This document shows, piece by piece, positions 9,261-60,262 of a DNA stretch of 64,000 bases. The DNA is from Octopus sinensis. Lineage: Eukaryota. The notes under the pieces were generated by a model that worked only from the letters and a program-made list of their open reading frames with translations, was not told the origin of the DNA and did no database searches. Location: assembly GCF_006345805.1 (NCBI RefSeq), contig NC_042998.1, positions 77,004,001 to 77,068,000 on the forward strand, written 5' to 3'. Positions within the stretch are counted from its first letter, which is position 1; every line of letters starts with the position of its first letter. The position numbers and the translations under genes were made by a program.

Positions 9261-9685
9261 CATCATTATTTTAGACCTGATGAGTGACTATATTTTTAAA
9301 TAGAATTAATTTTAGATCGATTTAACGAATTGATTTTATTATACATATTCAATCTCATGTGGAATTCTCGTGTATAGTTCTGCAAATTATATTTGGCTAT
9401 GACGATCATACTGACGAGTTGCGGACATCTACAAACTAGTTTGTGATTAATCTGTATATTTTGTATTGTTTCATTTGGCTTGCTCGCTTACGTTTTGGCG
9501 TTTGCTAAATTTTCTTGAGAACATTCCTTTTTTAATGGTAAGTTCATAGGGGGTATTATTCTAGCATAAGAGATGTTCACTTAGTGGTCATCACTCTTAT
9601 ATGTACATAATATACATTTTCTATATCTTCAGATTTTTCTATATGCTAAACCACTAGTTTTAAATTGATATTCAATTTTCCCCCT

Positions 9686-9719
<34 letters not shown>

Positions 9720-9949
9720 TACGAAGATGTACTTGCATAGCAAGTGACCTGATCTGAGATCGTGTGCTGGAACGAAAACAATTGCAGCGTGGAAGGTGTT
9801 TATAAGCCATTTAAGAAACACACAAAAACCGTTAGATTCAATTCAACATTTAAATTTAATTTGTCAAAACATTTTCGTCGCTTTGAGACCGAGACCTGTT
9901 CACTGACAAAATTCCGTGCTGCATCATATATATATATATATATATACAC

Positions 9950-16890: not shown

Positions 16891-17514
16891 CTAGTACTTG
16901 AATGGTTCTTATTTTATTGACTCCGAAAAAATGAACAGTAGATTCAACTTCAACGGAATTTGAACTCTATTTTAAAGTAATTCAAAACAATATATTGTGA
17001 GGGATTATTCCATTTGAATAATGCCGATAAATGTTTTCCTATGAAATTTAAAAAGATTACTATGCTTAGTAAGTTGTAAGCATAGAGTTCGATTAAAACG
17101 TTATTGGAAACGAAGTATAGGGAAAAAATCAAAGTGAAGCAATTGGTTTCGACAACGAAATCATTTTTAAAAAGTCAGAAAAATATATTAGATTGAACAA
17201 GAATTTATTTTTTTTAATATTTTAATATTTTATTGCTAATGGGTCGTGAAATTGAATTGGACTGTACAAAACGCAAAGGAAATTTTAATTAAAATCAATA
17301 TCACAAAGTTTCTCGAAATGTTTTATTGAGATTAGTCCTATTGGGGTTTACAAAACAAAACTTACAGTGTTGATACAGAAGATTAGAAATCAAAATATAC
17401 ACACGTATATAATCACGGACAAACACGTAACTGAATAAACTAACAATTCACACAGATATAGACCTATAAAAATAGAAGCATACAAACTCAAATCAGGCAA
17501 AAAATTGTTATCAA

Positions 17515-17550
17515 TAGCAGGAGTGGCTGTGTGGTAAGTAGCTCGCTTAC
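17515..17550 (+). mobile_element. SINE family A head (A box) ending in target copy AAGTAGCTCGCTTAC (17536-17550)
   Basis: GCAGGAGTGGCTGTGTGGTAAGTAGCTCGCTTAC matches the 5' end of the intact SINE at 47345-47775. The SINE continues at 20802. Confidence 0.85.
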
Positions 17551-19069
17551 TGCTACAAAGCTGTCGCGTTGTTTTTCGTCGCGGTGGAAGTCACGTCGTA
17601 CGTGAAAAACTGAACATTTGAAGCACAATCGCAGGTAAAGCATTTGTTTTTTGGGACCTTAGTGGGGTTTGCTGTTTGTATTTAAGAATTTTTTCGAACG
17701 GGGTTTCCACTGGGTTCCAGGCATTTGTTTGCCAGTGGTTGTGGAAGAAGACTCACTTCGAAGTGAAAATTGTGTTTATTTTGGGAGGCGTGTCCCTTCG
17801 AAAATGTTTTGGAATTTTCTATGTCTGAGTTTGTAGAAAAGTTGACCAAAGCCTGGGTGTGTGGGCTGCTACTCGGTATAGAGGCCGAGTGGATAGAAGA
17901 CACTATCCGTCAGGGCCTGGGTGGCGGCTGCCAGGCTCTTAAATGTAAAAATGTTGCCTGCGGTTGATTGGGTCGGGTCAAAAAATCAATTTTGACTCTA
18001 TGGACCCAATCAGCCGATGATCTGGTTTTACCAGATTTTTTTTAACAATGGCCGGTTCCAGTTACCCGGTGATGGTTGAGGGACGTCCCCCCAAGTGTCA
18101 CTTGTGCCTGGAATCGGGCCATATAAAGAAGAACTATTGCCGGGACCAGGCAAGGGTCCTGGAACAGTTCATTGAAACGGTGTCCCCTGCTCCCCCAGTG
18201 GAGGAAAAAGTCAAGGAAAGACGTAACCTGCTCGAAAACAAAAGGGAAGAAAAGAAAAAAGGTGGGCAAGAATGGTTGCCCACCGATGGATCCTGAAACG
18301 GCGAGGGGAGGGAGGATCTTCCAGAGATGTCGGAGGAACTCCACCCTCCCGTCGAAAAAGGAAAAAAGAAGAGAAAGAAGAAAAACGGGGCATTGCTGGC
18401 GACGGCATGTCCCGAAACTCCATCGGTGGGATATGTGCCACCGGAGGGGGAAGAAGATAACCTCGTCAGTGAGATGTGTGCCAATGAGAGAGGGAGTTGA
18501 GGCCCCTCCCAGTGAAAGTGATGAAGAATATATGTTCTTCTATTCAGGGGAGGAGTTATTGACAGTTTCGTTGAGAATAATATGGGTAGTCAGGTCCTGG
18601 GAAACCCGACTTGTATTGACAGCCCAGAGTGGCCTCCGCAGGTGGCTGCTCTGGTGCTGGAAAGAAAGTACTGTGATCTTATAATTGACACGTGTAAAAA
18701 CGAGAATTATAGAATTCTTTTGTGGAGCCCCGGATTGCGGTTGCATGAATGCCTGCAAGTTGCAAGAAAATTACTCGGAGAAGGATTGTAGAGGTTTATC
18801 GCCTTCATTTTGTATATAAATTGTGTTTTATAATTGTATAGACTTTTTAGTCCAAATATATTGTATTTGTAATTATAAGAGGGTTAATGCCTCTGTATAT
18901 GCGTTTTTAAAGAACAATATTTTAGAGAAGCAGAATGTCGGCGGGCGCTTTCTGTCTTCTCCCATCTTTATCATTTTTGTATCATACTCATTCGCCTCAT
19001 CACTGTTTGTGTCCAGCCTGCAAAATTACCTTATCTATATGCTGCCTACATGGCAAATTCAATGAATAA
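17551..19069 (+). mobile_element. SINE-targeted ORF1-only element, copy A (internal deletion of ORF N-terminus)
   Basis: Flanked by target copies at 17536-17550 and 19070-19084. The 5' UTR is homologous to copies B and E, and the element ends in ATGAATAAA. Confidence 0.8.
17835..18791 (+). pseudogene. Gag/ORF1-like protein remnant (copy A)
   Basis: KLTKAWVCGLLLGIEAEWIEDTIRQGLG, YPVMVEGRPPKCHLCLESGHIKKNYC, and C-terminal WPPQVAALVL...PGLRLHECLQ, broken by frameshifts. Confidence 0.75.
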
Positions 19070-19084
19070 AAGTAGCTTGCTTAC
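19070..19084 (+). other. Regenerated target site between tandem copies A and B
   Basis: AAGTAGCTTGCTTAC lies directly after A's AATAAA and directly before B's 5' end. Confidence 0.9.
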
Positions 19085-20786
19085 TTCAGTACAGAGAGGA
19101 CGCGTTTTTTTCGCGGTGGAAGTCACGTCGGTGAGTGTCAACGTCGAGAAATAGTGAAGCACAACTACTAGGTAAGATGTCTGATTTTCTGGGACCTAGT
19201 GGGGTTATGTTGCTGGTATTATTTATTCTTTGTCGAACAAGTGTTCTCCACTGGGTTCTATGCATTTGTCTGCCAGTGGTCGTGCTTAAAGTCTCACTTG
19301 GTTGTGAGAGGTTTGTTTTGAGAGGCGTGTCTCTCCGAAAATTGTGTTATTTCCAACTATTTCCGCCAGGAGGATTACCAATTGGCCTGAAGTACCGGGA
19401 TGGCCAGAAAAATCGCTGTGTTTTGTGTTTAAAGTCTCACTTAGCTGGGAGAAACCAAAATTGGAATATTTTTGTGCTGCGATGGCGAACCTACATTGTT
19501 TCAATTGAACTGTCTTCCTTCGTTCTTTGCTCTATCTTTCCGTTCTTTATTTTAGGGGGGGGGCTTATTGATTTTTCATTTCAAACTTTTTTGAACTTTT
19601 ATTTTGAGCATTTTTTATTTGCTCTGTTTTGTCATCATGACAACTAAAAACACTGTATTGGAGTGGCAAATTGTGGCTCCCAAGCAGTGGCTAAAAAAAT
19701 TTAATGCGAGAACGGTGGTATTGACGACGTATTCTACGTCCCTCGACACCATAGCTGTGTTCTCCCATTTTTAACAATGGCCTGTTCCAGGCACCTAGTG
19801 ATATTTGAGAGACGCCGCTCCCCTCAAGTGTTTCCTGTGCCTGGAATTGGTCCACATAAAGAAAAACTGTCTCCGGCACCAAGCAAAGGTCCTGGAAAAG
19901 TTAATAGAAGAGCCCCCTGCTCCCTCATTGGATGGGAAGGAGAGAGGGAGGAAATCGAGGAGGAGGCAACCCCATAAAAAAAGAAGGGGAGAAAAAGAAA
20001 GGTGGGCAACAATGGTTGCCCATCAATGGATCCTGAGGCAGCGGAAGGAATAGAAGAACTTCCAGACAAGACGGAGGAAGTCCACCCTCCCGTCGTAAAG
20101 GAAAAGCGGAAACGAAAAAAAAGGAGAAGAATGGAACATTGCCGGCGGTTGATGGTGAACTGCAGGCATGCCCGGAAATTTGTCGATGGGATGCCTGCCG
20201 CCGACAGAGGAAACAGCGGCCCCTCCTGGAAGGAGAAAAAAGGAGTTTGTCATCTTCTTGTAGAAGGGTGGGGCAGTACAGAGCTTCGTAGAGAAGCTGG
20301 ATGACCGGAGTGAGGAGCCCATGCCATGGACAGAGGACAAGGATTGGCATTCGCAGGTGACTATGAAGGTCATATCGGATGTCGGTATGTTCAGGGTGAT
20401 AGAAGCTTTCTCGAAGGACATGTTCAGATTTGCATTCTGGGGCCTCGACCTGGACTTGGAGCAGTGCCTATTGTAGCGTACAGCCTGGTCGGGGAGGAAG
20501 GAACTTAATTGCCTCAACTATGTGTTTTAAATTGTAGAAACTGTGGTAAGAGGTTTATTGCCCCAACTACGTGTTTTAAATCGTAAAAACTATTGTAAGC
20601 GGTTTAATGCATCATTTTGTATTTTTCTGAAGAACAATGTTTTAGAGAAGCAAAAGTCGGCGGGCGCTTTTTGTCTTCTCCCATCCTTATTATCTTCGTT
20701 TCATTATCATTTACTTCATTAATGTTCTTGTCTAGCCCGCAAAGCTACACTTTATGTACTGCCTTAATGGAAAATGCAATGAAATA
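19085..20786 (+). mobile_element. SINE-targeted ORF1-only element, copy B (internal deletion within RRM-like region)
   Basis: Starts TTCAGT (Inr-like) and ends ATGAAATA, followed by the target at 20787-20801 and the SINE body. Confidence 0.8.
19637..20476 (+). pseudogene. Gag/ORF1-like protein remnant (copy B)
   Basis: MTTKNTVLEWQIVAPKQW..., CFLCLELVHIKKNC, and C-terminal WHSQVTMKVI...FWGLDLDLEQCL. Confidence 0.75.
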
Positions 20787-21005
20787 AAGTAGCTTGCTTA
20801 CTAACCACATGGTTCCGGGTACAGTCCCACTGCGTGGCATCTTCGGCAAGTGTATTCTACTATAGCCTCGGGCCGACCAAAACCTTTGTGAGTGGATTTG
20901 TTAGACGTAAATATATATATGTATGTACAAAGAATAAGTCCTGGGTTTGATTTGCTCGACTAAAGGTGGCTCCAGCATGGCCGCAGTCAAATGACAAACA
21001 AGAAT
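20787..21005 (+). mobile_element. Target copy plus 3' body of the interrupted SINE family A
   Basis: AAGTAGCTTGCTTAC-TAACCACATGGTTCCGGGTACAGTCCCACTGCGTGGCATCTTCGGCAAGTG..., with tail CAGCATGGCCGCAGTCAAATGAC. Confidence 0.9.
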
Positions 21006-25928: not shown

Positions 25929-26086
25929 TCATATATATATATATACGACGGGCTTCATCCAGTTTCCGTCTACCAAATCCACTTACAAGGCTTTGGTCAG
26001 CCTTAGGCTATAGTAGAAGACACTTGCCCAAGGTGCCACGCAGTAGGACTGAACCCGGAGCCACGTTGTTGGTAAGCAAGCTACTT
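25690..26086 (-). mobile_element. Target copy (26072-26086) plus 3' body of SINE family A, joined to element C
   Basis: The reverse strand reads ATGAAATA|AAGTAGCTTGCTTAC|CAACAACGTGGCTCCGGGTTCAGTCCTACTGCGTGGCACCTTGGGCAAGTG... Confidence 0.9.
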
Positions 26087-27338
26087 TATTTCATCAAATT
26101 TGCCCTGACGGCATTACAAAGAGTAGCTTGCGGGCTTGACAGAAACATTAATGAGATGAATAAGGAAAAAAAAAACAGTTGAAAAAAAAACAGGATATTG
26201 ATGGGAGAAGAGAAAAACGCCTGCCGAATTTTGCTTCTCTAATACATTGTTGTTTTTTAAAAAGCCAAAATGTTGCTCCCCTTGTTCCTTTTTCTCCCTT
26301 TTTTTACTGGGAGGTCACTCTCTTCCTCCATCTCTCCTCCGGAAGGAGGAGGGGTTCTTCCACAACTAACTGCTCCAGGACCCTGCTCTGGTCCTTGGGA
26401 CAGTTCTTCTGTCTAGGCACCAGGCACTGATGACACTTCGGGGAGGACGTCCCTCAAGGATCACTGGATACCTGTACCCGGCCATCCTCAAAAAGAAAAA
26501 AGAACACCAGATCATCGGCTCATTGGGTCTACAGGTTCAAAACTGCTTTTAACCCCACCCAATCACCCGCAGGCATCATTTTAACATTCAAGAGTTTGGC
26601 TCCGCTACCACCCAGACCTCAGCGGATAGTGTCCTCTATCCACTCGGGCTCTATTCCGGGTGGCAGCACACACCCCCAAATTCTTGTTAATTTCCTCCCA
26701 CGATATGGGGGCAGAAACAGAATTTTCTCCCCTTCCAGAGGCTGGCTCGCAAAAAACCTCTTACAAGATACTTTTTTTCATTTAATTTGCCACAAGGGCA
26801 GCACATAGATTTACAGCAATTCTCCTTGTCAGGTCCCCCAAGCAATGTGACTTGCCGCCTGCAGACAACTCTGCAACAACAAGTCGGGGCCTGCAAAGAG
26901 GAAAGCAAATTCTTTCTTGTCAAAGGTCGCTGTGACCTTTGACAAAATATTTCCGTTACTACCTCCGCATCCACCTGCGGAGGCTATATCAGACTACTTG
27001 GGCAGAGCCAGTACGCACGTTCTCGATCACCCAAGCCGTCCAAAAATTTTTTCGTCGTCCCTCCCTCTTGGTAAAGGAGGAGAAACACCTCCTCTTCACA
27101 GGAAGGGACCTCAAACTGCTCCGTCAGCGCCACACTTCCCACTGACGGAGCCCTATCCGCAGGTGGCACATATCCCACCTGCGGCTCCGTCGGCGGCCCA
27201 GGAACATCCGCTGACCGTCCTCTGCTCCTCTTTTTCCTCATTCTTTTTGAGGCTGCGGGAACAGGGGGCTGCGTCGACAGACGCGGGGAGTCGCTACCCT
27301 CCTCCGCCGTCTGGACATTCTTTGGTGAGCAACCATTG
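26087..27338 (-). mobile_element. SINE-targeted ORF1-only elements, chimeric locus C (C1 26790-27338 + C2 26087-26790)
   Basis: C1 is colinear with 51147-51730 (~90% identity by eye). C2 carries mid-ORF1 sequence (EWIEDTIR), YPVILEGRPPKCHQC and the family 3' UTR. Confidence 0.75.
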
Positions 27339-30532: not shown

Positions 30533-30757
30533 GGCGGCGAGCTGGCAGCATCGTTAGCACGTCGGGCGAAATGCGTAGCCGTATTTCGTCTGCCGTTACG
30601 TGTTCTGGGTTCAAATTCCGCCGAGGTCGACTTTGCCTTTCATCCTTTCGGGGTCGATAAAATAAGTACCAGTTACGTTCTGGGGTCGATGTAATCGACT
30701 TAATCCCTTTGTTTGTCCCCTCTATGTTTAGCCCCTTGTGGGTAGTAAAGAAATATA
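30533..30757 (+). mobile_element. tRNA-derived SINE family B (Nin-domain-like core)
   Basis: GGCGGCGAGCTGGCAG...GGGTTCAAATTCCGCCGAGGTCGACTTTGCCTTTCATCCTTTCGGGGTCGATAAAATAAGTACCAG. Further copies at ~23050-23190, 31113-31520 (+) and 33570-33995 (-). Confidence 0.8.
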
Positions 30758-33700
30758 TCTGTTAGCCGTAGAAAAACAGGTTGTGCCCTAAAGCAGATTC
30801 AAGAGCTAAAGACTGACTCCTTCTTCTTTGGTCAAGCCCTCATCGACTTTTTCAAGTTCCCTTTGAAATGGAAAGTGAGCTTGAAATGTGAAATGCTGTC
30901 TTTCAACAAATTTGTTGAAAAAGTGGATGAGAGTGGTAAAGATAGTTCGCGTAAACAGACCCGTTCCGAGCATGAACCAGTAGATTGGGGGAGGAGAATG
31001 GGAAAAGGGAACTTGCTGTAGTGGTCAGGATGAGCTTGGATTTGTGGAATTTCCATGGGCAGATTTTGTGCCTATTGTAGGTAAGATTATTATTAGTAAC
31101 ATTATTGAGGCAGTGAGCTGACGGAATCGTCAGCGCGTCACTCAAAATCCTTATTTGCAACCGCTCTTTAAGTCCAGAGTTCAAATCCCGCTGAAGTGAA
31201 CTTAGCTCTTCATTCTCCCGGAGTCAATAAAATGAAGCAGCTGTCGCGTACGGGGTCGATGTTGTCGACATGCGCATGCCCACACCAAAGTGTTAACCTC
31301 TGCCAAAATTTGAAACCATGGGAAGGTGGTGAGCTGAAAGAATCGTTAGCACGTCGAGCAAAATTTACGGTCTGAGTTCAAATTCCGCTGAACTGGACTT
31401 TGCTTTTCCTCCTCTCGGGATCGATAAAATAAGTTCTAGTCGAGTTCTGGTGGGAGTATCGATGTAATCGACTAATCTCCTCGTACTAAAATTACTGGAA
31501 TTGAGACAAAATTTGGAACTATTATTATTAAGATGGTGGCAGAATTGTTGTAGCATCATACATAGTACGTTGCAGTGTTAGTTACAGCTCATCACGTTCA
31601 CATTTAAAACTCCGCCTGTATCGATTGTTGGACTAATGTACCAGTCATAGGCAGCAAATGATCAAAGAAAAATGACATTTTATTACGTAATCCCGTTACA
31701 ATAGTGCATTACACAAGGTGCAAAAGATTTAACGAATTATTATTATTAGTCAATAGAAGGCCAACACCAAATATGCATAATGAATAGATGCAAGCTATCT
31801 GCAATATCAAGAATCACTTCAGTTGATAACACAACACAGCTATGTTACATTAATACAAAACTCCAATGTTGTTGAGATTGCCGGTGCAAAAGTAATGGTA
31901 ACAATACTGTGGGAAACATAAAAAGCTCAAAAATTAAAATTGCAATCCATATTTTAAACACCATCATACAAAATGCTTCACTATTGTAGCTCGTTTCTAA
32001 ACATTACTTCCTGGTTTGTACAATTGCCGAACCAGCATGGTACAAACTCTACAATTCTTCTCTGACTATCTAGTTTATCCGCATCACAAGTTGCACTTAC
32101 ATCGTTGAATATGAGAAAAAAAGAAATAAATATAAAACAACCCCAATGAAAACATTCCTATCAGGACACAGAATTAAGGAGCACTGTGATAGAAATAGTC
32201 AATAAACATATTCTAAAATGAATTAAAAAATAATGCAACTCCAATTACATAATTGTAATAACCGAAATAATAATACTGCGTAACATGCTTATTATCCTTG
32301 CGTAGCAACTATCATTTCCTCTTTGCTTACCCTAGAAAGTATGAAAAACGTCTAATATTTCCTACAAACTTTGCTTTTGATACAATTATTCAACTCCCCA
32401 AAAAGCCCTATCAACAAATGACTACGATATCCCACCCCCTACTCCTGCTCATGATCACAGGTGCATATGTTGTCAGTCACTAAGAAACATGCTTAAGTGG
32501 TTAATATCAAGTAACTGAGAAGCCAATCTGTTTTATTAAGCAGAATATTTGCTATAACGATATTTCTGCTTCAGCAACTCAACGTTGAATCTGTCTGGAA
32601 TATAATAGAAAATAGGTCAGTTTCAAAACATTGATGCCCACGTCAAAAAAGGAAAGTTTGAAGGGAATAGTAGCCATTTGTTTTGATTTCTAGACGGAAG
32701 GAAATAGGAAATAACACTTACTGACCAAAGGCAAGAATAAAAATGTTACACAGTGTAATGGGGAAGCAACCAATGAGAGTTCTTCTCCATTGTCGTCGCC
32801 ATCTTAGTAAAGAAGAGCACATGAGATAATGCAATCTTTGTTGCATCATACCTAGGTCAATGGGATCAATGATAGCAGGTCAATGGATCGGTGATATCAA
32901 CAGAGCCAAACACATCAGAAACTCAATAAAAAATATATTACACAATAGAAATAAAACTCTCCATTCAACCCCTAAACAAGGAATTAATATGACACCAGGA
33001 AGTAAAAGTAAAATGTTAGAAAGTTGTCCAGTCACTATATTCTATATGAACACCAAATTAGCAGCAATACACTATATAAAATGTATACTGCACTGTCAGT
33101 AACGGTCATGACAATTATCACATTACTCATTCTCGCTATTCGATTACATGACATATCTCTTCAAAATCAATCTCAAAATCAATCTCAAATCATACATAAT
33201 ACACGCTTGCGCGATCAAACACACAATAACAGAAACTCAATATTCCAGTTAGCCATTTTCCAACATGTTCTGATCTCTGTCTCTACCAAATAGTATTGAC
33301 TGAAAATCAAAGGATTACTCAAGGGCACCATGGCCTTATAATTCTTAGAGCTACTGCGAAAATGCTTCGGGATCTAAGCAATTATAACAAACCTGCAATA
33401 TTTTTACTTACTCATACTAACAAAAGAAGTAGCAAATCTCTAGGTACGGCTATGATCTTCAGTAAAGATAATGATGTAGTGGTCAAGGCTGAAATACTTT
33501 AGATTTGTTTAATCAGAGCTATTCTTGAGATGAACAAGAAAGATAAGTACGAAAATAACTACTCATATTGGTTTTAATTTTTTGCACAAAGCCTGCAGTT
33601 TCTGGGGAGGTGGTAAGTCGACACCTGTGCTGAATTAGTACTTCTTTTATCGACCCCTAAAGAATGAAGGGCAAAGTCAACCTCGGTGGGAATTAAACTT

Positions 33701-39037: not shown

Positions 39038-39700
39038 AAGGGGCGAGCTGGCAGAAATGTTAGCACACCTGGCGAAATGTTTAGCGGTATTTCGCCTGCC
39101 GCTACGTTCTGAGTTCAAATTCCGCCGAGGTCGACTTTGTCTTTCATCCTTTCGGGGTCGATAAATTAAGCACCAGTTATGCACTTGAGTCGATGTAATC
39201 GACTTAATCCCTTTGTCTGTCCTTGTTTGTCCCCTCTGTGTGTAGTCCCTTGTGGGCAGTAAAGAAATAAGAAACGTTAGCACGCCGGGCGAAATACTTA
39301 GCAGTATTTTGTCTGTCTTTACGTTCTGAGTTCAAATTCCGCCGATGTCGACTTTGCCTTTCATCCATTCGGGGTCGATAAATTAAGCACCAGTTATGCA
39401 CTTGGGTCAATGTAATCGACTTAATCCCTGTGTCTGTCTTTATTTGTCTCCTCTGTGTGTAGCTCCTTGTGAGCAGTAAAGAAATAAGAAACGTTAGCAC
39501 GCCGGGCGAAATGCGTGGCCCAATTTCGTCTGCCGTTACGTTCTGAGTTCAAATTCCGCCGAGGTCGACTTTGCCTTTCATCCTTTCGGGATCGATAAAT
39601 TAAATACCAGTTGCGTACAGGGGTCGATCTAATCGACTGGTTCCCCCACCCTAAAAAAAAAAAATTCGGCCTTGTGCCTAGAGTAGAAAAGAATGATAGT
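39038..39700 (+). mobile_element. Head-to-tail trimer of SINE family B
   Basis: Three ~217-bp units; units 2 and 3 start at AAACGTTAGCACGCCGGGCG and lack the first ~15 nt of the head. Confidence 0.85.
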
Positions 39701-40007
39701 ATATTAAATGTAGTTAAAAAGTGTATAACGAAAGCAAGCATGATTGTATATCAAATTGTGAAATAGACTCTTTAATAATGAAACAAACATGATTTAACTA
39801 GTTGCATGGATTCCTGAATTAGCAGTAGCTAGTATATGAAATCTAGTTAAAGTGTTCATTCTGTGACCACCATTTTCGGGGACTGTCATACCACAACAAT
39901 GTGAGTAAGATTTGATATTATTACGGCTGTAAATCTTACAGGCCTAGTTGTGTCTCATAGCTCTTTCGAGAAATTTAAAGCGGAGAAAAAGTATTAATTT
40001 TTGTTAA

Positions 40008-40153
40008 TGTGGTAAGTAGCTTGCTTACCAACCATATGGTTTCCGGGTTCAGTTCCACTGCGTGGCACCTGGGGTAAAAGTCTTATACTATAGCCTCGGG
40101 CTGACCAAAGCTTTGTGAATGGATGTGGTAGACGGAAACTGAAAGAAACCTGC

Positions 40154-45080: not shown

Positions 45081-46495
45081 TGTCGATAAATTTGTCAGTG
45101 TGCAGTTTAGCTTGATGGTAAAGCACTCAGCCGGAGTCTTTGAGTGGTATGGGTTCCAGTCCCATAGCTGGTTGTTGGTAATTTTTTCCGCCTTGTAAGG
45201 ATTATTTACCTCAGTATTTCTGCTGTTCTAACGGCAAGTCTGCGTTCGAAAAAATATCTTATTTGTATCGTTTATGCATATCTATATATCTTTTGTGGAT
45301 TCCTTAATTTCATGAATGACATCAGTTCTTTATGGAATACGATTTTCAAACTGAATTCATCTTAAACTAACAATACGGATTCTTTAATAATTCTATAAAT
45401 TTAGGTCTATGCTGGCGTTATTTATCCAGATAATTTGTGATTTACATTCATTTTTGCAAACGTTTTCTGAATTTTTCGAGAAATGTAGGCAGACGACGTT
45501 TCCAAAGATACTGCAGTCTTTAGAATTTATTATGGTATATTAAACGAGATGGGAGAAGAGTGAATAGGATAAGCAAAATACTCAGTTAGTGCACCAGGCT
45601 AACAATATTGCTTAGATCAGTAACGTGCTCCGCGTCGCGTATTCTTGTGGAAACCAGAAATGACTGATGAAAGCAGCATTAAATATTTAGGTCGTTCAAT
45701 TTTTACTCAACCGATCAATGCGCCAATTGAATAAACATATCAATAACAAACCTATAATGACTACTGGAAACAGCTGTAAGTCAAAATTAACGAAATAAAG
45801 AAAGAATATATAATAACCATTATTTATACTCTGTATTGCATATATATATATGTTCATCCTCCGCGAGTCATATTTTTTTAACCATGATCAATTCAAGCTC
45901 ATATCAAAATCACTGAAGACAGAAGTTTACGTCAGCTTAATGCATTAATATCATCACAGTAATAAACTAAATATGCATGGAAAAGATAAAAGTTAAAATA
46001 AGGAATTAGATGTTAATAAAATAGAATATAAATCAAACTCATAAGGTTATAGTAATTTAGATATTCTTTGTTTGTAGCAGCATCGACGATGAAACCTTGT
46101 TGAGAGCTGGTTAAATATTAGCGTTGAAGAATGCGAAATATGATCATTAAATTGGCTCCAGTAATTAATTTTGTAGTGACGTTTCGTTGTAGGGGTTCAC
46201 AATTATAAATCTGAATGTTACGAAAATCAACATGAAAGGAAATTATCTAATAAGATTTTACTTTGATGGTGTAATTATAGAAGCTAAACTATTGACGATG
46301 ATATCAAGAGAAAAAGACTGATATCTACTTTGCTGTAACTAGATCCCTGTTACGATTTGCTATGAATTCTCAATGCGTATTGTATTGTTGGGCAATAATA
46401 ATGAATAATGCAATATGCATCCCATAACAACTAGGCACAAACGCATATATATGTGTGTATGTATGTGTATGTATGTATGTATGTATGTATGTATG

Positions 46496-49754: not shown

Positions 49755-49778
49755 AGCTGTGTGGTAAGTAGCTTGCTT
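49755..49778 (+). mobile_element. SINE family A head fragment ending in target copy
   Basis: GCTGTGTGGTAAGTAGCTTGCTT lies immediately before element D. Confidence 0.8.
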
Positions 49779-49779
49779 C

Positions 49780-51930
49780 CGCACATGCGCGTCAAGTCGA
49801 CTTCTTGCCAGTGAACATTGAGAACGTGAGCTTTGAGCTCCGTCCTAAAATTAAAAAAGAACAAAAACAGAGAAGGTTGTCGAGGTAGGTGATTTTGTTT
49901 GTTGTGAGCTGGCATAATTTATTGCGTGCGAATTATTTTTTCAGTAAATTGTGCCCAGCTCTGGGACAATTTTACCTGCTCTCGGCGGCTGCTGTTTTTG
50001 TATATTGTGAATTTATTGTGAATTTTTGGATTCATTTAAAAAAAATGTGATGGGGCGTATCCTCGCCCGAATAGAACCTGTTAGAGTTGCTGTTGCAGTT
50101 ACCGTTGGCTGTAGCCAGTATTGTGTTTGGATTTATTTTACCAATTACCGGAAAAAAACAGATTTATGCCAAGGACCCTATTCACATTAGGCCGGGAGTA
50201 CATGCTGGCCAGGAAATTGGATTTTTGCTGTGTGAATTGTTTTTCTACTTTTCGTCTATCTTTCCTGATTTTTTCTTTCTTTTTGAACTGTTAATTTATT
50301 TTTTGGACTTACTTATTTTTTTACTGTTTCTGTTAACTTTTTGTGTACCTTTTTTTACATCTTCTTTGACCTTTGAACTTTCTTTGAACTTTTAAGACTT
50401 TTTTTGCACATGGCGAAAACAAACGGTGCCGCTGTTTTGGAGTGGGAGGTGGTCCCACCTAAACAGTGGATTAAAGATCTTGAGAAGAGGATGGTAGTAC
50501 TACGGACCTATTCTAGGTCGTGTGGTGCCATTGCCTTCTTCGACAAGAGCGTGATAGAGAAAGAGTTGGCAGACTACCTGCCAACTATAAAATTTATTTC
50601 ACGGGGGACCAAATTTGCAACGGCCTGGTTGCTGTTTGTCACCCCTGAGGAAGCTGGCAGATTTGCTAGCGAGCCCCTTGAGGGAGAAGAGATTTTGTTC
50701 CTCCCCACTTATTGTGGGAGGAAGATAAGAAGAGCCTGGGTCTGCGGATTGCCCCCGGGCACGGAGGCGGGATGGATCGAAGATACCATCCGGCGAGGCC
50801 TGGGGGATAGCAGGTCAGACTATTGAGTTTGGATGTTGCTCCTGTGGTCGACTGGGAGGAGTCAAAGGCAACTTTGACCCTGTGGACCCCGGTGGCCGTG
50901 GGAGATATGACATTCCTAGACTTTCTAAAAATAGCCGGGTACAGGTACCCGGTGATACTTGAGGGACGCTTCCCCAAGTGTCACCTGTGCCTCGAGCCCG
51001 GCCATATAAGAGAAAACTGTACCAAGGGCCGTAGTAAGGCCCTGGTGCACGAGAAAGAGAAGGTGCCCGCCGACCCCTCATTGGAGGGGAGACGGTGGAA
51101 GTCGTGGAGGAATTTGCCTTCACGAAAAGAAAAAGAAAGGTGAGTTACAATGGTTGATCACCAAAGAATGTTCAGGCGGCGGAGGAGGGTAGCGACCCCG
51201 CGTCTGTCGACGTAGCCCCCTGCTCCTGCAGCCTCAAAACGAAAGAGGAAAAAGAGGAGCAGAGGACGGTCGGCGGATGCTCCTGAGCCGCCGACGGGGC
51301 CGCAGGTGGGATGTGTGCCATCTGCGGATAGGGCTCCGTCAGTGGGAAGTGTGCCACTGACGGAGCAGTGTGAGGTCCCTTCCTGTGAAGAGGAGGTGTT
51401 TCTCCTCCTTTACCACAAGGGAGGTACGGTGAGTAAATTTTTGGACGGCTTGGGTGACTGAGAACGTGTGTACTCGGTCTGCCCAAGTAGCCCGATATGG
51501 CCTCCGTAGGTGGCTGCGGAGGTAGTAACGGAAAACATTTTGTCAAAGGTCGAAGCGACCTTTGACAAGGAAGAATTTGCTTTCTTCTTTGCAGGCCCTG
51601 ACTTGTCGTTGCAGAGTTGTCTGCAGGCGGCAAGTCATATTGCTTGGGGGATCTGACAAGGAGAATTGTTGTAAATCTATGTGCTGCCCTTGTGGCAAAT
51701 TAAATGAAAAAAGTATCTTGTAAGAGGTTTTAGTGCCTCCTTGTAAGAGGTTTGAAACCTTATATTGATTTTTAAAAGAAGAAAATGTTTTCGAGAAAAA
51801 TCCAAACGGCAGGTGTTGGGTTTCGTCTCTCATTTATTCATTTTATTTAATTTTCATTCATTAATTTGTTTGTCCAGCCCGCAAAGCTACACAATCTTTG
51901 TACTGTCTATATGACAAATTTTATGAAATA
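49780..51930 (+). mobile_element. SINE-targeted ORF1-only element, copy D (most complete)
   Basis: Target on the left; ATGAAATA|AAGTAGCTTAC on the right (51931-51941, one GCTT unit missing). One frameshifted ORF and no RT. Confidence 0.8.
50410..51656 (+). pseudogene. Gag/ORF1-like protein (~415 codons when frameshifts are repaired): RRM-like region, CCHC knuckle, charged linker, unknown C-terminal domain
   Basis: MAKTNGAAVLEWEVVPPKQW...AWVCGLPPGTEAGWIEDTI / YPVILEGRFPKCHLCLEPGHIRENC / EEVFLLLYHKGG...FAGPDLSLQSCLQAA. Confidence 0.8.
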
Positions 51931-51941
51931 AAGTAGCTTAC

Positions 51942-53062
51942 ATTTTTCCCATGAGTCTCTGTTATCAGTGTGCGCATGTGTCATTGTATTGTGCAGTGAA
52001 GAAGATAGCCGGCAGTGTTTAGCCTGCCAAAAGAAGCTGCTGCAAGGTAAGACTTTATTCTCTTGGACCCAGTGAGGGTCGTTGTCTGTGTTTATATTTT
52101 TTTACAAACAAGGAATCCTCACTGGATTCAGGATGTTGGTCTACTTGCAGTTCAGCAATATGGTTCACATTAAATGAAAATTCTTTCTCCTTGTGAGAAG
52201 TATATTTATCCTTCAACCAAAAATTATCCTTCAACCAAAACTTTTTAACAGTGTATGTTTTTACTATTGGAAAGCTGAATTTCAACTGTTCGCATGAAAT
52301 GAAATTTTTTTCTCATTGTGTGAAATATACTTTGGTGACGTATCCTGCCACCAAAAGTCGTTCGCTGTTTGTAAATAGTGTGTATTTTACAACTACGTTG
52401 GAAAGCCGTATTTTAAGTGGAGCAGTCCAGGTTCTAGTTGAAGTACCATAGGGCTTGGAGTACCTGAATGCCCAGAAGATTTTTCGTTGTGTTTTTTTAG
52501 CTGTTTTCTTCTTCTATTGTGACTTTTTTAAATATTGAACTGTTTGCTTTTTTCTTCTTCCCTTTTGTTTCCTTTTGAATTTTCTCTTTCCTTTTTGTAA
52601 ACTATCGTTTTGGACTTTTTAATTTTTTACTTTATAACATGGCAAAAAAAATACGGATAATATTGTAGAGTGGAAGATTGTCCCACCTAAAGAATGGATC
52701 TGGCAGCAAGATGATAGGACGGTGGTGATTAGAACGTATTCAAAGGTTCTCGACACCATTACCATCTTCTCCAAGCAGATGATTGAGCAGGAGTTGGCGG
52801 AACATCTGCCAACCATTACGTATATCTCTAGGGGAGTCAAACATGCAACGGTTTGGTTGCTGTTTGATACCCCAGAGGAGGTTCGCAGTATTGCGAGCCA
52901 GCCCATTGAGGGTAAAGAAATTTTGTTTCTTCCCACTTATTGTGGGAAAAAATTGACGAGGGTTTGGGTCAGTGGTTTGCTACCGGGATTTGAACCCCAC
53001 TGGATAGAGAATACTATCCGTGAAGGTCTTGGTGGCAGCGGAGCCAGGCTCCTCTGTGTATG
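51942..53062 (+). mobile_element. SINE-targeted ORF1-only element, copy E (3'-truncated)
   Basis: Begins directly after the regenerated target. The 5' UTR aligns with A and B. ATG at 52639, then after a frameshift in an A8 run NTDNIVEWKIVPPKEW...HWIENTIREGLGG. Confidence 0.75.
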
Positions 53063-55936: not shown

Positions 55937-56116
55937 ATGTTATATAATATATATAAGTGTGATAAGTGTGGTGTGTGTATTGTGTGGTATAGATATGTAT
56001 AATATATAGGTACTTTATATGTATATATATATATATATACATAATACATATAGGTACTTATACATATGTATATATATATATATATATAATTACATATATA
56101 GGTACTTATACATATG

Positions 56117-56159
<43 letters not shown>

Positions 56160-56389
56160 TGTATATATATATATATATATGTACATATAGGTATATTTAC
56201 TTATTTAGATACATATGTATATATATAAATATATATATGTGTATTTATATATGTATATCTATCTATCTATAGATAGATATAGACATGTATAACGGGAAGC
56301 TTTATGAAAATGGACAAAAGACGAAGGCAGGTGGAAAACAAACAAACAATTGTATTAGTATGGCGCTCAGGAAATATAAATAAAACAAG

Positions 56390-56427
56390 TCTTTAACGTT
56401 TCGAGCCTACGCTCTTCAACAGAAAGA
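56390..56427 (-). ncRNA. Minimal type-I hammerhead ribozyme motif (variant core) in 3' terminal repeat
   Basis: The reverse strand reads TCTTT-CTGTTGA-A-GAG-CGTAGG-CTC-GAAA-CGTT-AAAGA: 5-bp stem I, 3-bp stem II and a palindromic ACGT stem III. Confidence 0.6.
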
Positions 56428-56591
56428 TACACAGAGAGAAAAAAAAACACAGAAAGAAGGAGAGAAAAAAAATGCGTGCAGTAACTAACGAATCAACATG
56501 GCGATCTGGTCAAAGATCAAACATGAGACGCGAGAGCGAAATAAGGGGAGATAATAGGGTGGATAATAGGGTTGAATGACCAGCTCCAACA

Positions 56592-56955
56592 TAAGGGTGT
56601 GTGTGTGTGTATGAGAGAGTATTAGTGCGTATGAGAGGTCTGGACGTGTGTATGTATAGGGTTGGTGTATGTATTAGTATGTATTAGTATGTATAGGGTG
56701 TGTGTGTGTGTGTGTGTATGAGAGAGTATTAGTGCGTATGAGAGGTCTGGACGTGTGTATGTATAGGGTTGGTGTATGTATTAGTATGTATTAGTATGTA
56801 TTAGTACGTATTAGTATGTATAAGGGTGTGTGTGTGTGGGTGTATGAGAGAGTATAAGTGCGTAGAGAGGAGAGGTCTGGACGTGTGTATGTATAGGGTT
56901 GGTGTATGTATAGTATGTATTAGTATGTATTAGTACGTATTAGTATGTATTAGTT
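56592..56955. repeat. Three ~100-130-bp tandem units in PLE 3' region
   Basis: Repeated AGGGTGTGTG...GAGAGGTCTGGACGTGTGTATGTATAGGGTTGGTGTATGTATTAG. Confidence 0.85.
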
Positions 56956-57369
56956 GGTGTATGTATTAGTATGGCACATCATATATGATGTGATGTGTAA
57001 AGTCGTGTGGTGTAGTGTGGAGAGAGGAGAGAGGGGGGGGGAGAGGGGGATAGAGAGGGGGGATAAGGAAGGGGAGGAGGAGGGAGGAGGAGGGGAGGGG
57101 GGGAGGAGGGAGGGGAGGAGGAGGGGAGGAGGAGGGGGAGGAGGGAGGGGAGGGGAGGAGGGAGGAGGAAGGAGGAAAGAGGGAGAGGGGGAAGAGAAGG
57201 GGAGTGAGGAGCAGAGGACGGGGAAGAGGAAAGAGGGAAGGAGGGAGGGAGAAAGAGGGAAGAAGGGAAGGGGAGTAGGGGTTGAAAGGATGAAGGACTG
57301 AAGAAGTAGGGGTCGGGGGGGAAAGGTAGGTGAGAGGAGGGGGAGAGGGGGTTAGATGAGGAGGGGAGA

Positions 57370-60262
57370 GTTGGACCAAATGGCGTATAAGAGCGAAGAG
57401 AGAAGATTAATTCCTGTTCACGGCGCAAACGGGAATCCGGATGGCCTCTGTGTAAGGACAAACCGAACACAGATAGGTGTTGCAAGGAGTGACCGGTGGA
57501 GCGGAAATGGCGTGAGACCGGTGTGTCGTCGCAAGGGGATGTCACGAAGGTGTTCCGCGAACCGGTCAGTCAAGCGGCGTCCCGTTTGTCCGATGTACAA
57601 GGAATGGCAGAGAGAGCAAGAGACGCAATAGATAATATTGCTGGAGGTGCAGGTGAAGGAGTGGATGATGGGATAGGGTCGATGATGGGTGCTAGTGAGG
57701 AGGGTGGTGTTGGAGAGGTAAGGGCAAGTGCGGCAACGTGGGCGGGAGCAGGGGAACGAGGCGGGTTGGGAGGTAGGGTCAGGGAAGGAGCTATGGACCA
57801 AAAGGTCTCGAAGGTTGTGGGCTCGTTTGAAAGAGGGGAGAGGTCGGTTAGGGAAGAGGTGTGAAGTGGACGGGTCGGATCGGAGATGACGGAAAGCTCG
57901 AAGAATGGTGCGTTGGAGAGGTAGGGTCGTGGGGTGGTAAGTGAGGGGGAAAGGGAGGCGGGAGACTAAAGGGTGGGTTCGGGGAGAGAGAGCAGATACA
58001 CGGTCCACGGACCGTGCTCTAGCAAGGGCGGTGTGGATAGTGGTGAGGGGGTATCCACGTAGGGTGAAGTGGTGAGCCATACGTTGAGACTGAGTCTCAA
58101 AGTCATGGTCGTCACTACAGAGCCTACGTAGACGGAGGAATTGGGAATAGGGGATGGAAAGCTTGGTGTGTTCTGGGTGGGAGGAAGAGAAGTTGAGGTA
58201 TGAGTGTGAGTCTGTGTGTTTGTAGTGAATGGAGGTAGTAAGAGTGGAGTGAAGAATGCTAACCGAAATGTCGAGGAAGGAGACAGAGGTGTTGGAGATA
58301 GTGGAAGTGAAGTGGAGGGCTGGATGGAAAGATTGGACGAAAGAGAGGAAGGAATCTAGATGTTCACGGGAGAGTGAGGTGGCACCGATAATGTCGTCAA
58401 TGTAACGACCATATAGTTCAGAAGTGGGACCAGTGAAATTAGAGAATATTTGGGCCTCAATATAGCCAACGAACAGGTTCGCATAGTTGGGGCCCATTCG
58501 CGTTCCCATGGCCACTCCCGAAATCTGATGGTAGAACTCGCCCGCGAACGAGAAGCAGTTCAGAGTAAGGACAAGTTCGGCCAGACGAATGAGTGTGGAG
58601 GTGTCAGGTACAGGGTTGAAGCGGAGGTCAAGAAAGTGTCGAAGGGCCTGCAGTCCTGTGGTGAGGGATAACAGTATAGAGGCTTTGGATGACCATAGTA
58701 AAAAGGATTTTGGAGGAGCCGGGAGGAAAGGAGAAAGAGTTGAAAAGCCGGAGAGCATGGTTGGTATCGTGGATGTGGGAGGGAAGAGATGCCACTAGGG
58801 GAACAAGGACACGGTCGAGGTATTTAGAGATGAGCTCCGTGGGGCAGTTACAGGCGGAGACAATGGGGCGGCCAGGGTTGTTGGGTTTGTGGATTTTGGG
58901 GAGGAAGTAAATGGTGGGGGTACGTGGGGTTCGCACAATTAGGTTGGATGCGGTGTGGGGGAGACGGGAGGACGAGATGAAGTCGCGGACAGTAGAGGAT
59001 ACCGTCTGTTGGTAGCTACGTGTGGGGTTAGAGGGCAGAGGGGAGTAGAAGGAGGTGTCATTGAGTTGGCGGAAAGCCTCGGCCCTATAGAGGTCCGCGC
59101 GCCACACCACTACAGCTCCACCCTTGTCAGCCGGTTTGATGATAATGTCAGCGCGCCGTTGGAGGGAACGAAGAGCCAAGAGCTCAGCCGGGGAGATGTT
59201 GAGGTGTCGTTGGCGCCTGGAGAAGTTGAACCGCTCCAATGCACGCTGACAAGCGCCCGCGAAAAGATCCACTGCTAGGAACTGGCCAGGGGCAGGCGTC
59301 CACGGGGATGGTCGGCGGCCCAGGCCAGTGAAGCAGTCCTCTTCGTTGGGTGTGGGTGGCGAGTCGTGGTAATGCGCACCCAACCGGACGCGGCGCACAA
59401 AGCTGTGGACATCAACTCGCGTCTGGAATTCCTTACAGGATGGAGTGAGGAGGATGAAACGCAGACCCCTACCAAGGACGGAGCGTTCAGCCGCAGAGAG
59501 GGGAAGATCGGGGGGAATGGTAACAACAGACGGAAGTAGAGAAGGGGTGGGTGGAATAGAAGTAGGAGGGGTGGTAGGTCTCGGGGAGGTCTGAGGGGGA
59601 GGTCGGAGGGGGAGGGATTGGGGAGGTGTATGGGGGTGGTTTGGGGGGGAAGTAGGGTTAGGTGTAGGTGGATGGAGCCTATCAGGAGGGGAGAAGGGGT
59701 TGTAGGGAGGGGCAGTGGGGTTAGGTATGGGTGGATGGAGCCTATCGGGAGAGGAGAAGGGTAGTGGAGGAGTTGGGGTAGTGGCGTCGGGTAGGGTGGA
59801 ATGGAAGAGTGATTGGAGTTTACGAAGTTTGGTATCAGAAAGAAATTGATGGAAGAGTTGATTCAAATGGATAATGAAGTGTAGCGTGTTTGGAGCATAG
59901 AGAGGCGGCAGAGAGGAGAAGAATGTGGAGAAAGCAGGAGGAAGAAGGCGGTTGATGGTATGTAGTTTAGAGAGATTGGAGCGAATGGTGGCCCGCATAA
60001 GGCGGTAAGATGTGGTGCGGAGTATGGGTAAGATGGAAGAATCCGAGTGGAGAGCAGGGTGGAAGTGGAGGCGGAAACCTTTAGGGATGAGTCGGTGATG
60101 TAGGCAGCGGCTTAGGAAATAGACATGGCTAGAGAAGCGGGTTGTTTTTAAAAGAAGTAGAGAGAGATTAACGGACGGCTGAAGGCAGTATACGGGAAGT
60201 TAACGGAGATGATCCTTCAAACGATGATGGAGGGTGAGGAGGTAGGACCTAGGATCCGGCAT
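57370..60262 (-). pseudogene. Penelope-like RT / GIY-YIG endonuclease polyprotein (frameshifted)
   Basis: N-terminal HVYFLSRCLHHRLIPKGF; RT motifs FLPKIHK, GRPIVS, GVAMGTRMGPNYA and YIDD; GIY-YIG motif IIYCVSCSLCHSLYIGQTGRRL...RFAEH. Frameshift near 58630-58760. Confidence 0.9.

What the first reader, a model, noticed from the sequence alone, without database searches (positions are those of the whole stretch)
26076..26131. 3' UTR carries the reverse complement of the element's own target site
Seen in sequence: about 36-41 nt upstream of the 3' junction each copy has a conserved motif. In C it is GCAAGCTACT (minus strand; 26122-26131), a perfect 10-nt reverse complement of the target AGTAGCTTGC. 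B has GCAAAGCTAC (20739-20748) and D has GCAAAGCTAC (51881-51890), each complementary with a 1-nt bulge. A has a weakened GCAAAATTAC (19020-19029). Inference: either a read-through transcript folds this motif onto the downstream target copy, enclosing the small hairpin and AATAAA, or the RNA could base-pair with the displaced target strand and contribute RNA-encoded specificity. The second possibility would be a new targeting mode for an element that encodes no nuclease.
Basis: partly seen in the sequence, partly recalled or inferred. Interest (0 to 1): 0.8.

Follow-up and report, generated by a model that had tools for sequence, protein, structure and literature searches.

The report
Target-complementary motif in octopus retroelement tail
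A gag-only, LINE-derived retroelement that inserts at one spot in an abundant octopus SINE has, near its 3' end, a short sequence complementary to that spot and to its own first bases; the sequence is real, but with only four copies its role in targeting is suggestive, not shown.

Summary
C has a perfect 10-nt complement (GCAAGCTACT). B and D have GCAAAGCTAC, which gives 9 bp with one bulge. A is degenerate. The motif ends 36-41 nt before the 3' junction.

Only C is clearly beyond chance (5/2000 shuffles; B 120, D 59; A not significant). The motif is the 3' half of a conserved 20-nt block. It ranks in the top ~10% of 10-nt windows in the last ~210 nt, but it is not uniquely conserved.

- The 'target' lies in a hairpin of a tRNA-like SINE.
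- The same 12-14 nt also begin every element copy.
- The element encodes only a gag-like ORF. Its distant ORF1 relatives sit in full L1-like LINEs (APE+RT) that share the same 3' tail module, so nuclease and RT probably come in trans.

Best reading (about 0.4): read-through RNA carries the downstream target copy and pairs with the motif. This closes a terminal stem-loop around the RT-recognition hairpin and AAUAAA. During target-primed reverse transcription the nicked bottom strand, whose 3' end has the same sequence as the motif, takes the motif's place.

RNA-guided targeting is neither supported nor excluded. Four relatives with other flanks have no such motif. No covariation test was possible.

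The parts
26122..26131 (-). Copy C motif GCAAGCTACT, a perfect 10-nt reverse complement of AGTAGCTTGC
   Evidence: duplex -16.5 kcal/mol, 5/2000 shuffles; pairing probability 0.97
26101..26113 (-). Copy C small hairpin TGCC-GTCAG-GGCA. It is homologous to the GCC-CTTGT-GGC hairpin of the octopod L1-like LINE and SINE2 tails.
26086..26100 (-). Copy C A-rich terminal 15 nt, AATTTGATGAAATAA. AATAAA is completed by the first base of the flank. No poly(A) tract.
26072..26085 (-). Downstream target copy AGTAGCTTGCTTAC. It continues into the rest of the SINE, to about 25931.
20739..20748 (+). Copy B motif GCAAAGCTAC (9 bp plus a 1-nt bulge with the flank at 20788-20797)
51881..51890 (+). Copy D motif GCAAAGCTAC. 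The flank at 51932-51941 is the mutated 5' end of copy E, AGTAGCTTAC.
19020..19029 (+). Copy A degenerate motif GCAAAATTAC
17537..19070 (+). Element copy A: 14-mer, 5' UTR with an intron-like GT..AG, decayed gag-like ORF, 3' UTR. It is preceded by the SINE head at 17513-17536.
19071..20787 (+). Element copy B, head-to-tail with A but only about 75% identical to it. It is followed by the rest of the same SINE from 20788.
49767..51931 (+). Element copy D, preceded by the SINE head fragment CAGCTGTGTGGTA. It starts AGTAGCTTGCTTCC.
51932..53060 (+). Element copy E (5' part only), head-to-tail with D and about 70% identical to it
26086..27338 (-). Copy C. It is composite: a D-like C-terminal ORF and UTR piece (27338-26753, 92% identical to D 51148-51731) joined to a 5'-truncated copy that runs to the 3' end.
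20645..20680 (+). Conserved upstream 3' UTR stem-loop GAGAAGCAAAA...TTTTTGTCTTCTC (copy B coordinates; about 26239-26205 on the minus strand in C). Five of its pairs have compensatory changes.
51672..51722 (+). Fossil inside the D 3' UTR, also in C1 at about 26797-26747 on the minus strand: the last ~38 nt of an element tail plus AGTATCTTGTA, inserted at TTGTA|AGAGGTTT

Best explanation
The motif is a cis-acting part of the 3' end of a non-autonomous, ORF1-only, LINE-derived retroelement. The element inserts, always in the same orientation, between GGTA and AGTAGC in a hairpin (TGGTAAGTA-GCT-TGCTTACCA) of a tRNA-like octopus SINE.

Shown:
- The insertion site, and the 12-14 nt of target sequence at both ends of every copy.
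- Precise 3' junctions in 4 of 4 copies, with no poly(A).
- 5'-truncated copies.
- A 3' tail module (small hairpin plus an A-rich AATAAA stretch) shared with octopod L1-like LINEs.

Inferred:
1. Because AAUAAA sits at the very end of the element, transcripts run some 10-30 nt into the flank and so carry the downstream target copy.
2. This copy pairs with the motif. The pairing closes a 55-60-nt terminal stem-loop that presents the RT-binding hairpin and marks where cDNA synthesis should start.
3. An L1-like ORF2 protein supplied in trans nicks the bottom strand of a SINE copy. The 3' end of that strand reads ...GTAAGCAAGCTACT-3', the same sequence as the motif plus 4 more nt.
4. The bottom strand displaces the motif from the RNA's terminal target copy. 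The unpaired UUAC could serve as a toehold. The strand then primes cDNA synthesis exactly at AAUAA|AGUAGC.

The same pairing would let a finished cDNA end prime on a second RNA. That would account for head-to-tail arrays of unrelated copies.
For: - Site specificity: the SINE head lies upstream of A, D, L001:9476 and L002:15712, and the SINE remainder lies downstream of B and C. Ten empty SINE copies carry the intact site.
- Independent insertions: A/B are about 75% and D/E about 70% identical, while the SINE flank of B is 91% identical to another SINE copy.
- TPRT-type hallmarks: 5'-truncated pieces in C and the 49-nt fossil.
- Tail module shared with full LINEs carrying APE+RT+zf-RVT and with a second SINE. 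The L004 ORF2 aligns to human L1 ORF2p at E=2e-71.
- The stem is predicted in the MFE of all four read-through ends and has high pairing probability in C and B.
- The motif is conserved above the UTR average.
- Relatives have unrelated sequence (TTGT.TTGTCCCC) at the homologous position.
- The fossil tail plus AGTATCTTG suggests flank-containing RNA.
- Precedent: R1Bm needs downstream target sequence for accurate initiation, SART1 3' sequences may anneal to the bottom strand (PMC7265360, citing PMC1074724), and cotranscription with the target is said to strengthen specificity (PMC4494074).
Against: - Only four 3' ends could be obtained and they are homologous, so they count as roughly one evolutionary observation.
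- The ancestral 9-bp-plus-bulge pairing is only marginal against shuffles.
- Copy A has lost the pairing.
- The non-complementary half of the conserved block is as conserved as the motif, so the block may be kept for another reason.
- RNAalifold on the MAFFT alignment did not select this stem. C is misaligned there.
- An intramolecular stem would compete with primer annealing unless exchange is assisted.
- No transcript data, no partner LINE with the same target, and no covariation.
Confidence: 0.4

Rival explanations
1. Coincidence. The 20-nt block TGTC.AGCCCGCAAAGCTAC is conserved for some other reason, such as a protein-binding site or part of the RT-recognition region. Its 9-10-nt complementarity to the flank has no function.
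For: - B and D reach only 120/2000 and 59/2000 in shuffles, and A is not significant.
- The flanking half of the block has no complementarity and is equally conserved.
- The target is itself a quasi-palindrome with a central AGCT, which makes partial self-complements easier to find.
- One of about 33 unrelated metagenome contexts of the junction 17-mer also had the 10-mer upstream.
Against: - The position (36-41 nt from the end) and the pairing are kept in three copies that are otherwise 70-78% identical.
- C is perfect at 5/2000.
- Relatives have other sequence at this position.
- Terminal complementarities in retroelements are often functional (established knowledge).
Confidence: 0.3
2. The motif pairs with the element's own 5' terminus (AGUAGCUUGC...), not with the flank. 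This would be long-range RNA circularisation, or a strand-transfer or template-jump aid, loosely like retroviral R or the DIRS internal complementary region.
For: - Every copy starts with the same 12-14 nt.
- Three D-type copies at unrelated loci in two species share the variant ...GCTTCC, while 10 empty SINEs have TTAC or a close variant. This suggests the 5' copy travels with the element.
- Head-to-tail arrays occur with precise junctions.
Against: - The TTCC variant could instead mean a 12-nt duplication followed by an element that starts CC.
- The complementarity does not extend beyond 10 nt (read directly).
- A's changes in its 5' end and in its motif are not compensatory.
- The partners are 1.5-2 kb apart.
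Confidence: 0.15
3. RNA-guided targeting. The motif invades the SINE duplex and pairs with the top strand AGTAGCTTGC, while the RNA's read-through target copy pairs with the freed bottom strand. Two RNA:DNA helices would then specify the site, and a non-specific L1-like nuclease would nick it.
For: - The geometry allows it: the RNA stem has the same sequence as the DNA target duplex.
- The element encodes no nuclease.
- Relatives of the presumed machinery include dispersed, non-specific families such as SINE2 and L007 with an ordinary 15-nt TSD.
Against: - No direct evidence.
- Relatives in the same LINE group can be target-specific without such a motif: L003 is flanked by (ATT)n on both sides.
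- The fossil insertion sits at a site that resembles the target mostly on its upstream, non-motif side (TTGTTGTA|AG), which hints at protein recognition.
- Only one target is known, so there is no covariation.
Confidence: 0.1
4. The stem is part of an RNA-processing device that cuts co-transcripts or tandem transcripts at the junction: a self-cleaving ribozyme, or a mimic of an RNase P/Z substrate. This would be analogous to the R2 5' ribozyme, whose P1 stem uses 28S sequence.
For: - The stem brackets the exact junction.
- UGAUGAAA lies next to it in C.
- Tandem arrays would need unit-length processing.
Against: - Rfam finds nothing at gathering thresholds or at E<=10 in 25980-26300.
- The hammerhead core is absent: no G12, and CUGAUGA is not conserved among A-D (read).
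- ARAGORN finds no tRNA-like fold.
Confidence: 0.05

Closest known systems
Target-specific L1/Tx1-type LINEs that insert into other repeats (Tx1L into Tx1D, Tx1-Mar into Mariner-N4, Keno into U2 snRNA genes; PMC4494074)
   Same: - One fixed site inside another multicopy element, in one orientation.
- A short target duplication.
- Head-to-tail arrays and 5' truncation.
- ORF1 relatives belong to LINEs with APE+RT+zf-RVT that are close to L1 ORF2p.
   Different: - The copies here encode only the gag-like ORF, with no RT or nuclease.
- Clade membership cannot be tested without an RT.
- No subterminal target complement is described for those families, to my knowledge.
R1Bm, SART1 and TRAS: 3' read-through or target-like 3' sequence anneals to the nicked bottom strand (PMC7265360; Anzai 2005, PMC1074724)
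   Same: - Precise 3' junctions without copying a tail.
- A proposed need for downstream target sequence in the template RNA.
   Different: In those elements the relevant RNA sequence has the polarity of the top strand, so it pairs with the primer. The motif here has the polarity of the primer itself, so it can only act as an intramolecular partner or on the top strand.
ORF1-only non-autonomous LINE derivatives (mammalian HAL1; Drosophila HeT-A; from memory)
   Same: - A gag/ORF1-like protein only, with RT supplied in trans.
- HeT-A also forms head-to-tail arrays.
   Different: - The target is a SINE hairpin, not a chromosome end or dispersed sites.
- The ORF carries an extra C-terminal domain with no database match.
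R2 5' HDV-like ribozyme, whose P1 stem pairs element RNA with flanking 28S sequence (Eickbush lab; from memory)
   Same: Element RNA carries a complement of its own flanking target, to be used in a co-transcript.
   Different: - That device is at the 5' junction and is catalytic.
- Here the feature is at the 3' junction, and no ribozyme signature was found.
Group II intron EBS/IBS pairing (RNA-encoded DNA target recognition; established knowledge)
   Same: It is the model for the most novel reading: RNA bases read the DNA target.
   Different: - There is no intron ribozyme here and no covariation evidence.
- The machinery here is LINE-type TPRT.

Membership tests
Non-LTR (LINE-type) retroelement moved by target-primed reverse transcription | 5'-truncated copies with intact 3' ends | tested here: met
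   C contains a copy that starts in mid-ORF and runs to the canonical 3' end. A 49-nt tail fossil lies in the D/C1 UTR.
Non-LTR (LINE-type) retroelement moved by target-primed reverse transcription | Short target duplication flanking the insert | tested here: met
   The 12-14 nt AGTAGCTTGCTT(AC) lie at both ends, while the empty SINE has one copy. Whether the 5' copy is a duplication or travels with the element is unresolved.
Non-LTR (LINE-type) retroelement moved by target-primed reverse transcription | Encodes a reverse transcriptase and an endonuclease | tested here: not met
   Only a gag-like ORF is present (weak zf-CCHC hit). tblastn with an L1-like ORF2 finds no RT inside the copies. The element is therefore non-autonomous.
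Non-autonomous partner of an octopod L1-like LINE | 3' tail shared with an autonomous LINE | tested here: inconclusive
   The module (hairpin NGCC-N5-GGCN plus A-rich AATAAA) is shared with the LINEs in L003, L004 and L007 and with SINE2. No LINE with a closely matching tail or the same target was found.
Tx1 clade | RT phylogeny places the element in the clade | not testable with these tools
   The element has no RT. The ORF2 of its distant ORF1 relative is L1-like with zf-RVT, but no clade-level phylogeny was possible.
Self-cleaving ribozyme (hammerhead, HDV-like, others in Rfam) | Match to the family's covariance model or conserved catalytic core | tested here: not met
   No Rfam hit at gathering thresholds or at E<=10. 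The hammerhead core is absent in A-D.
RNA-guided target recognition (group II intron-like logic) | The guide sequence co-varies with the target across lineages | not testable with these tools
   Only one target and four 3' ends are available. Relatives with other flanks (L003, L004, L005, L007) have no equivalent motif.
DNA transposon or TIR element | Terminal inverted repeats that extend beyond the short match, and a transposase | tested here: not met
   The inverted match stops at 10 nt and lies 36-41 nt inside the 3' end. There is no transposase, and 5'-truncated copies exist.

The most novel reading that the evidence does not exclude
The element's RNA itself specifies the insertion site through a double lock. 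The subterminal motif pairs with the top strand of the SINE target, and the read-through terminal copy pairs with the bottom strand. The RNA stem is thereby exchanged for two RNA:DNA helices, and an otherwise unspecific L1-like ORF2 protein is recruited to nick and prime there. This would make it a programmable, RNA-guided LINE-type insertion system.
Probability: 0.1. Interest if true: 0.85.

Novelty: new variant of a known kind. Interest (0 to 1): 0.5.

Why it matters
If the stem is functional, it would show how a retroelement that lacks its own enzymes can still achieve single-site precision: it packages a copy of its target, plus a matching 'placeholder' for the DNA primer, in its 3' end. 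That would extend the R1/SART1 read-through-annealing idea.

In the less likely RNA-guided version, it would point to retargetable LINE-type insertion. That question is currently open and technologically relevant for R2 and L1 systems.

Even if the motif proves incidental, the family is an unusual case for transposon biology. It encodes only a gag-like protein, it is specific for a SINE hairpin, and it builds arrays of divergent copies.

Tried and rejected
1. Known ribozyme or tRNA-like processing signal. Rfam (gathering thresholds and E<=10) and ARAGORN found nothing, and the hammerhead core is not conserved.
2. Motif as a captured inverted SINE fragment. There is no similarity beyond the 10 nt.
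3. Terminal inverted repeat of a DNA transposon. The match does not extend, and 5'-truncated copies exist.
4. 'SINE head + element + SINE tail' moving as one composite unit. Tandem junctions lack the head, neighbours are only 70-75% identical while the SINE flank is 91% identical to another SINE copy, and the upstream flanks differ.
5. Pairing of GCCCGC in the conserved block with the GCGGGC loop of the upstream stem-loop. The changes in A, C and D are not compensatory.
6. Obtaining more 3' ends. Three protein searches found only P0001 or nothing. The HMMER library search gave only distant cephalopod relatives. The family copies in L001 and L002 lack 3' ends. Pattern scans of all loci found no further ends. 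The metagenome scan gave only chance matches.
7. Covarying motif in relatives. L003 ((ATT)n flanks), L004 (tandem LINE array), L005 (ORF1-only) and L007 (15-nt TSD) show no subterminal complement of their flank.

Full report
**Observation**

The window is octopod DNA. The only close protein match of the element's ORF is Octopus sinensis LOC115225585 (P0001, 63% identity).

| Copy | Motif | Coordinates | Spacer to last element base |
|---|---|---|---|
| C | GCAAGCTACT | 26131->26122, minus strand | 36 nt |
| B | GCAAAGCTAC | 20739-20748 | 39 nt |
| D | GCAAAGCTAC | 51881-51890 | 41 nt |
| A | GCAAAATTAC | 19020-19029 | 41 nt |

Each 3' end reads ...ATGAAATAA|AGTAGCTTGC, with no poly(A).

**What the 'target' is**

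AGTAGCTTGCTTAC is part of an abundant repeat of about 175 nt with A-box-like and B-box-like motifs and a (TA)n/(GT)n tail, so it is a tRNA-like SINE. Intact copies lie at 40010(+) and 47770(-) and in every other octopus locus fetched. In the SINE the site sits in a 9-bp hairpin, TGGTAAGTA-GCT-TGCTTACCA. The element is inserted between GGTA and AGTAGC, always in the SINE's orientation.
- The SINE head precedes A (17513-17536), D (49755-49766), L001:9476 and L002:15712.
- The SINE remainder follows B (from 20788) and C (from 26085 downward).

Every copy also begins with the same 12-14 nt. The motif is therefore the reverse complement of the element's own 5' terminus as much as of the downstream target. 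Three D-type copies at unrelated loci in two species share the variant ...GCTTCC, whereas ten empty SINEs do not. This suggests, but does not prove, that the 5' copy travels with the element.

**What the element is**

- A (17537-19070) and B (19071-20787) lie head to tail inside one SINE but are only about 75% identical. D (49767-51931) and E (from 51932) are about 70% identical. B's SINE flank is 91% identical to another SINE copy. These are independent insertions into the same site, not local duplications.
- C is composite and contains a 5'-truncated copy.
- Each copy has a 5' UTR with a conserved GT...AG intron-like segment.
- Each copy has one decayed ORF with an RRM-like region, a CCHC knuckle (weak Pfam hit) and a C-terminal domain with no database match.
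- The 3' UTR is 270-400 nt long.
- No RT or nuclease lies inside the copies.

An exhaustive HMMER search found only cephalopod relatives at 22-36% identity. Several of these are ORF1 of full LINEs:
- L004 (O. vulgaris) is a tandem array of 5.3-kb units with ORF1 plus an APE/RT/zf-RVT ORF2. The ORF2 aligns to human L1 ORF2p at E=2e-71.
- L003 (O. sinensis) is flanked by (ATT)n on both sides.
- L007 (Argonauta) is flanked by an ordinary 15-nt duplication.
- L005 and L006 are further ORF1-only elements.

All of these, and a second SINE family in the window (30715, 39229), end in the same module: a small hairpin (GCC-CTTGT-GGC type) followed by an A-rich stretch containing AATAAA. The family is therefore best seen as an ORF1-only derivative mobilised in trans by an L1-like LINE.

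**Is the complementarity more than chance?**

Against 2000 dinucleotide shuffles of the last 150 nt, the motif:flank duplex is exceptional only in C (5/2000). It is marginal in B (120/2000) and D (59/2000) and absent in A. The ancestral state was probably GCAAAGCTAC, which gives 9 bp and a bulge.

The motif window is well conserved: 0.85 mean pairwise identity against 0.59 for the last ~210 nt, which puts it in the top ~10%. However, it is the 3' half of a 20-nt block whose other half is equally conserved and is not complementary to the target.

At the homologous position the relatives carry unrelated sequence (TTGT.TTGTCCCC), and none shows a complement of its own flank. Only four 3' ends could be obtained despite all available routes. 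A proper conservation or covariation test was therefore not possible.

**Structure**

With 14-20 nt of flank included, the motif:flank stem is part of the minimum-free-energy fold in all four copies. Its ensemble probability is 0.97 (C), about 0.8 (B), 0.3-0.6 (D, whose flank is mutated) and 0.05 (A).

RNAalifold on the MAFFT alignment, where C's motif is misaligned, instead picks three other features:
- an upstream stem-loop (GAGAAGCAAAA/TTTTTGTCTTCTC) with five compensatory pairs;
- the small hairpin, with one compensatory pair in D;
- the target's own hairpin.

No Rfam family matches and ARAGORN finds nothing.

**Mechanistic reasoning**

In target-primed reverse transcription, with the element sense strand on top, the priming bottom strand ends ...GTAAGCAAGCTACT-3'. 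This is the same sequence as the motif. The motif therefore cannot pair with the primer. It can pair with three things: the RNA's own read-through copy of the target, the RNA's 5' end, or the top DNA strand.

Because AAUAAA lies at the very end of the element, cleavage and polyadenylation would be expected 10-30 nt into the flank. The RNA would then carry the target copy. A fossil in the D/C1 3' UTR (the last ~38 nt of a tail followed by AGTATCTTG, inserted at TTGTA|AGAGGTTT) fits such RNAs.

The model I consider most likely (about 0.4) is this:
1. The motif holds the terminal target copy in a stem that frames the RT-binding hairpin.
2. The nicked bottom strand replaces the motif by strand exchange.
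3. cDNA synthesis starts exactly at the junction.

This extends what is reported for R1Bm and SART1 (PMC7265360; PMC1074724) and for co-transcription with the target (PMC4494074). It also predicts head-to-tail arrays of unrelated copies, because every full-length cDNA would end in the primer sequence if the 5' copy is transcribed.

**Rivals**

- Coincidence inside a block conserved for another reason: 0.3.
- Pairing with the element's own 5' end: 0.15.
- RNA-guided invasion of the target: 0.1.
- A processing device: 0.05.

**Verdict**

The second is unsupported but not excluded. The element family (gag-only, specific for a SINE hairpin, array-forming) is a new variant of known target-specific LINE biology. 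The role of the motif needs a genome-wide census, transcript-end mapping and a mutational assay.

Noticed in passing
window 17537-20787 and 49767-53060: Head-to-tail pairs of element copies (A-B, D-E) have precise junctions, yet the partners are only 70-75% identical. This points to repeated independent insertion into the same SINE site, or template jumping between different RNAs.
   Followed up: partly
window 51672-51722 (D) and about 26797-26747 minus strand (C1): The 3' UTR of the D-type subfamily contains a fossil: the last ~38 nt of an element tail plus AGTATCTTGTA, inserted at TTGTA|AGAGGTTT. That site resembles the SINE target mainly on its upstream side.
   Followed up: partly
window 17633-17733, 19172-19277, 49885-49945, 52047-52149; L001 about 9600-9720: A GT...AG intron-like segment with a polypyrimidine tract is conserved in the 5' UTR of all copies. 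If it is a real intron, the transposition intermediate is unspliced RNA.
   Followed up: no
window 20645-20680 (B), 26239-26205 minus strand (C), and the equivalent positions in A and D: A conserved 3' UTR stem-loop (GAGAAGCAAAA...TTTTTGTCTTCTC) has five compensatory base-pair changes. Its structural support is stronger than that of the reported motif.
   Followed up: partly
window 30560-30760 and 39053-39703: A second SINE family (three 217-nt tandem units at 39053-39703) has a 3' tail, GTCCCCTCT..GCCCCTTGTGGGTAGTAAAGAAATA, that matches the tail of the L1-like LINE in L004. This is probably a LINE-SINE partner pair.
   Followed up: partly
L004 4440-19200 (O. vulgaris OX597840.1): Tandem array of at least three near-identical full-length L1-like LINEs (ORF1 plus APE/RT/zf-RVT ORF2), joined tail to head and ending in an assembly gap.
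   Followed up: partly
L003 9720-15370 (O. sinensis CM016872.1): An L1-like LINE flanked by (ATT)n on both sides, so it may be a microsatellite-specific family. The annotated 623-aa 'gene' there is its ORF1 fused to other exons.
   Followed up: no
L005 9900-11665 and L006 9300-11770 (O. vulgaris): Two further ORF1-only relatives. L005 is followed by a sequence homologous to its own 5' end (TGCTGGGTTCG...). L006 lies between ~100-nt direct repeats next to a long foldback.
   Followed up: partly
window 56000-60000: A strongly G/T-skewed region (GC skew up to 0.63) contains 446-aa and 456-aa ORFs on the minus strand with no Pfam match. They are probably repeat artefacts.
   Followed up: partly
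window 45103-45170: Rfam reports a tRNA match (33.5 bits against a gathering score of 29), but ARAGORN finds no tRNA in the window. It is possibly a SINE head or a tRNA pseudogene.
   Followed up: no
L022 and L027 (metagenome contigs): A chance occurrence of the junction 17-mer in unrelated DNA also has GCAAGCTACT about 48 nt upstream. This is a reminder that such complementarity can arise by accident.
   Followed up: yes
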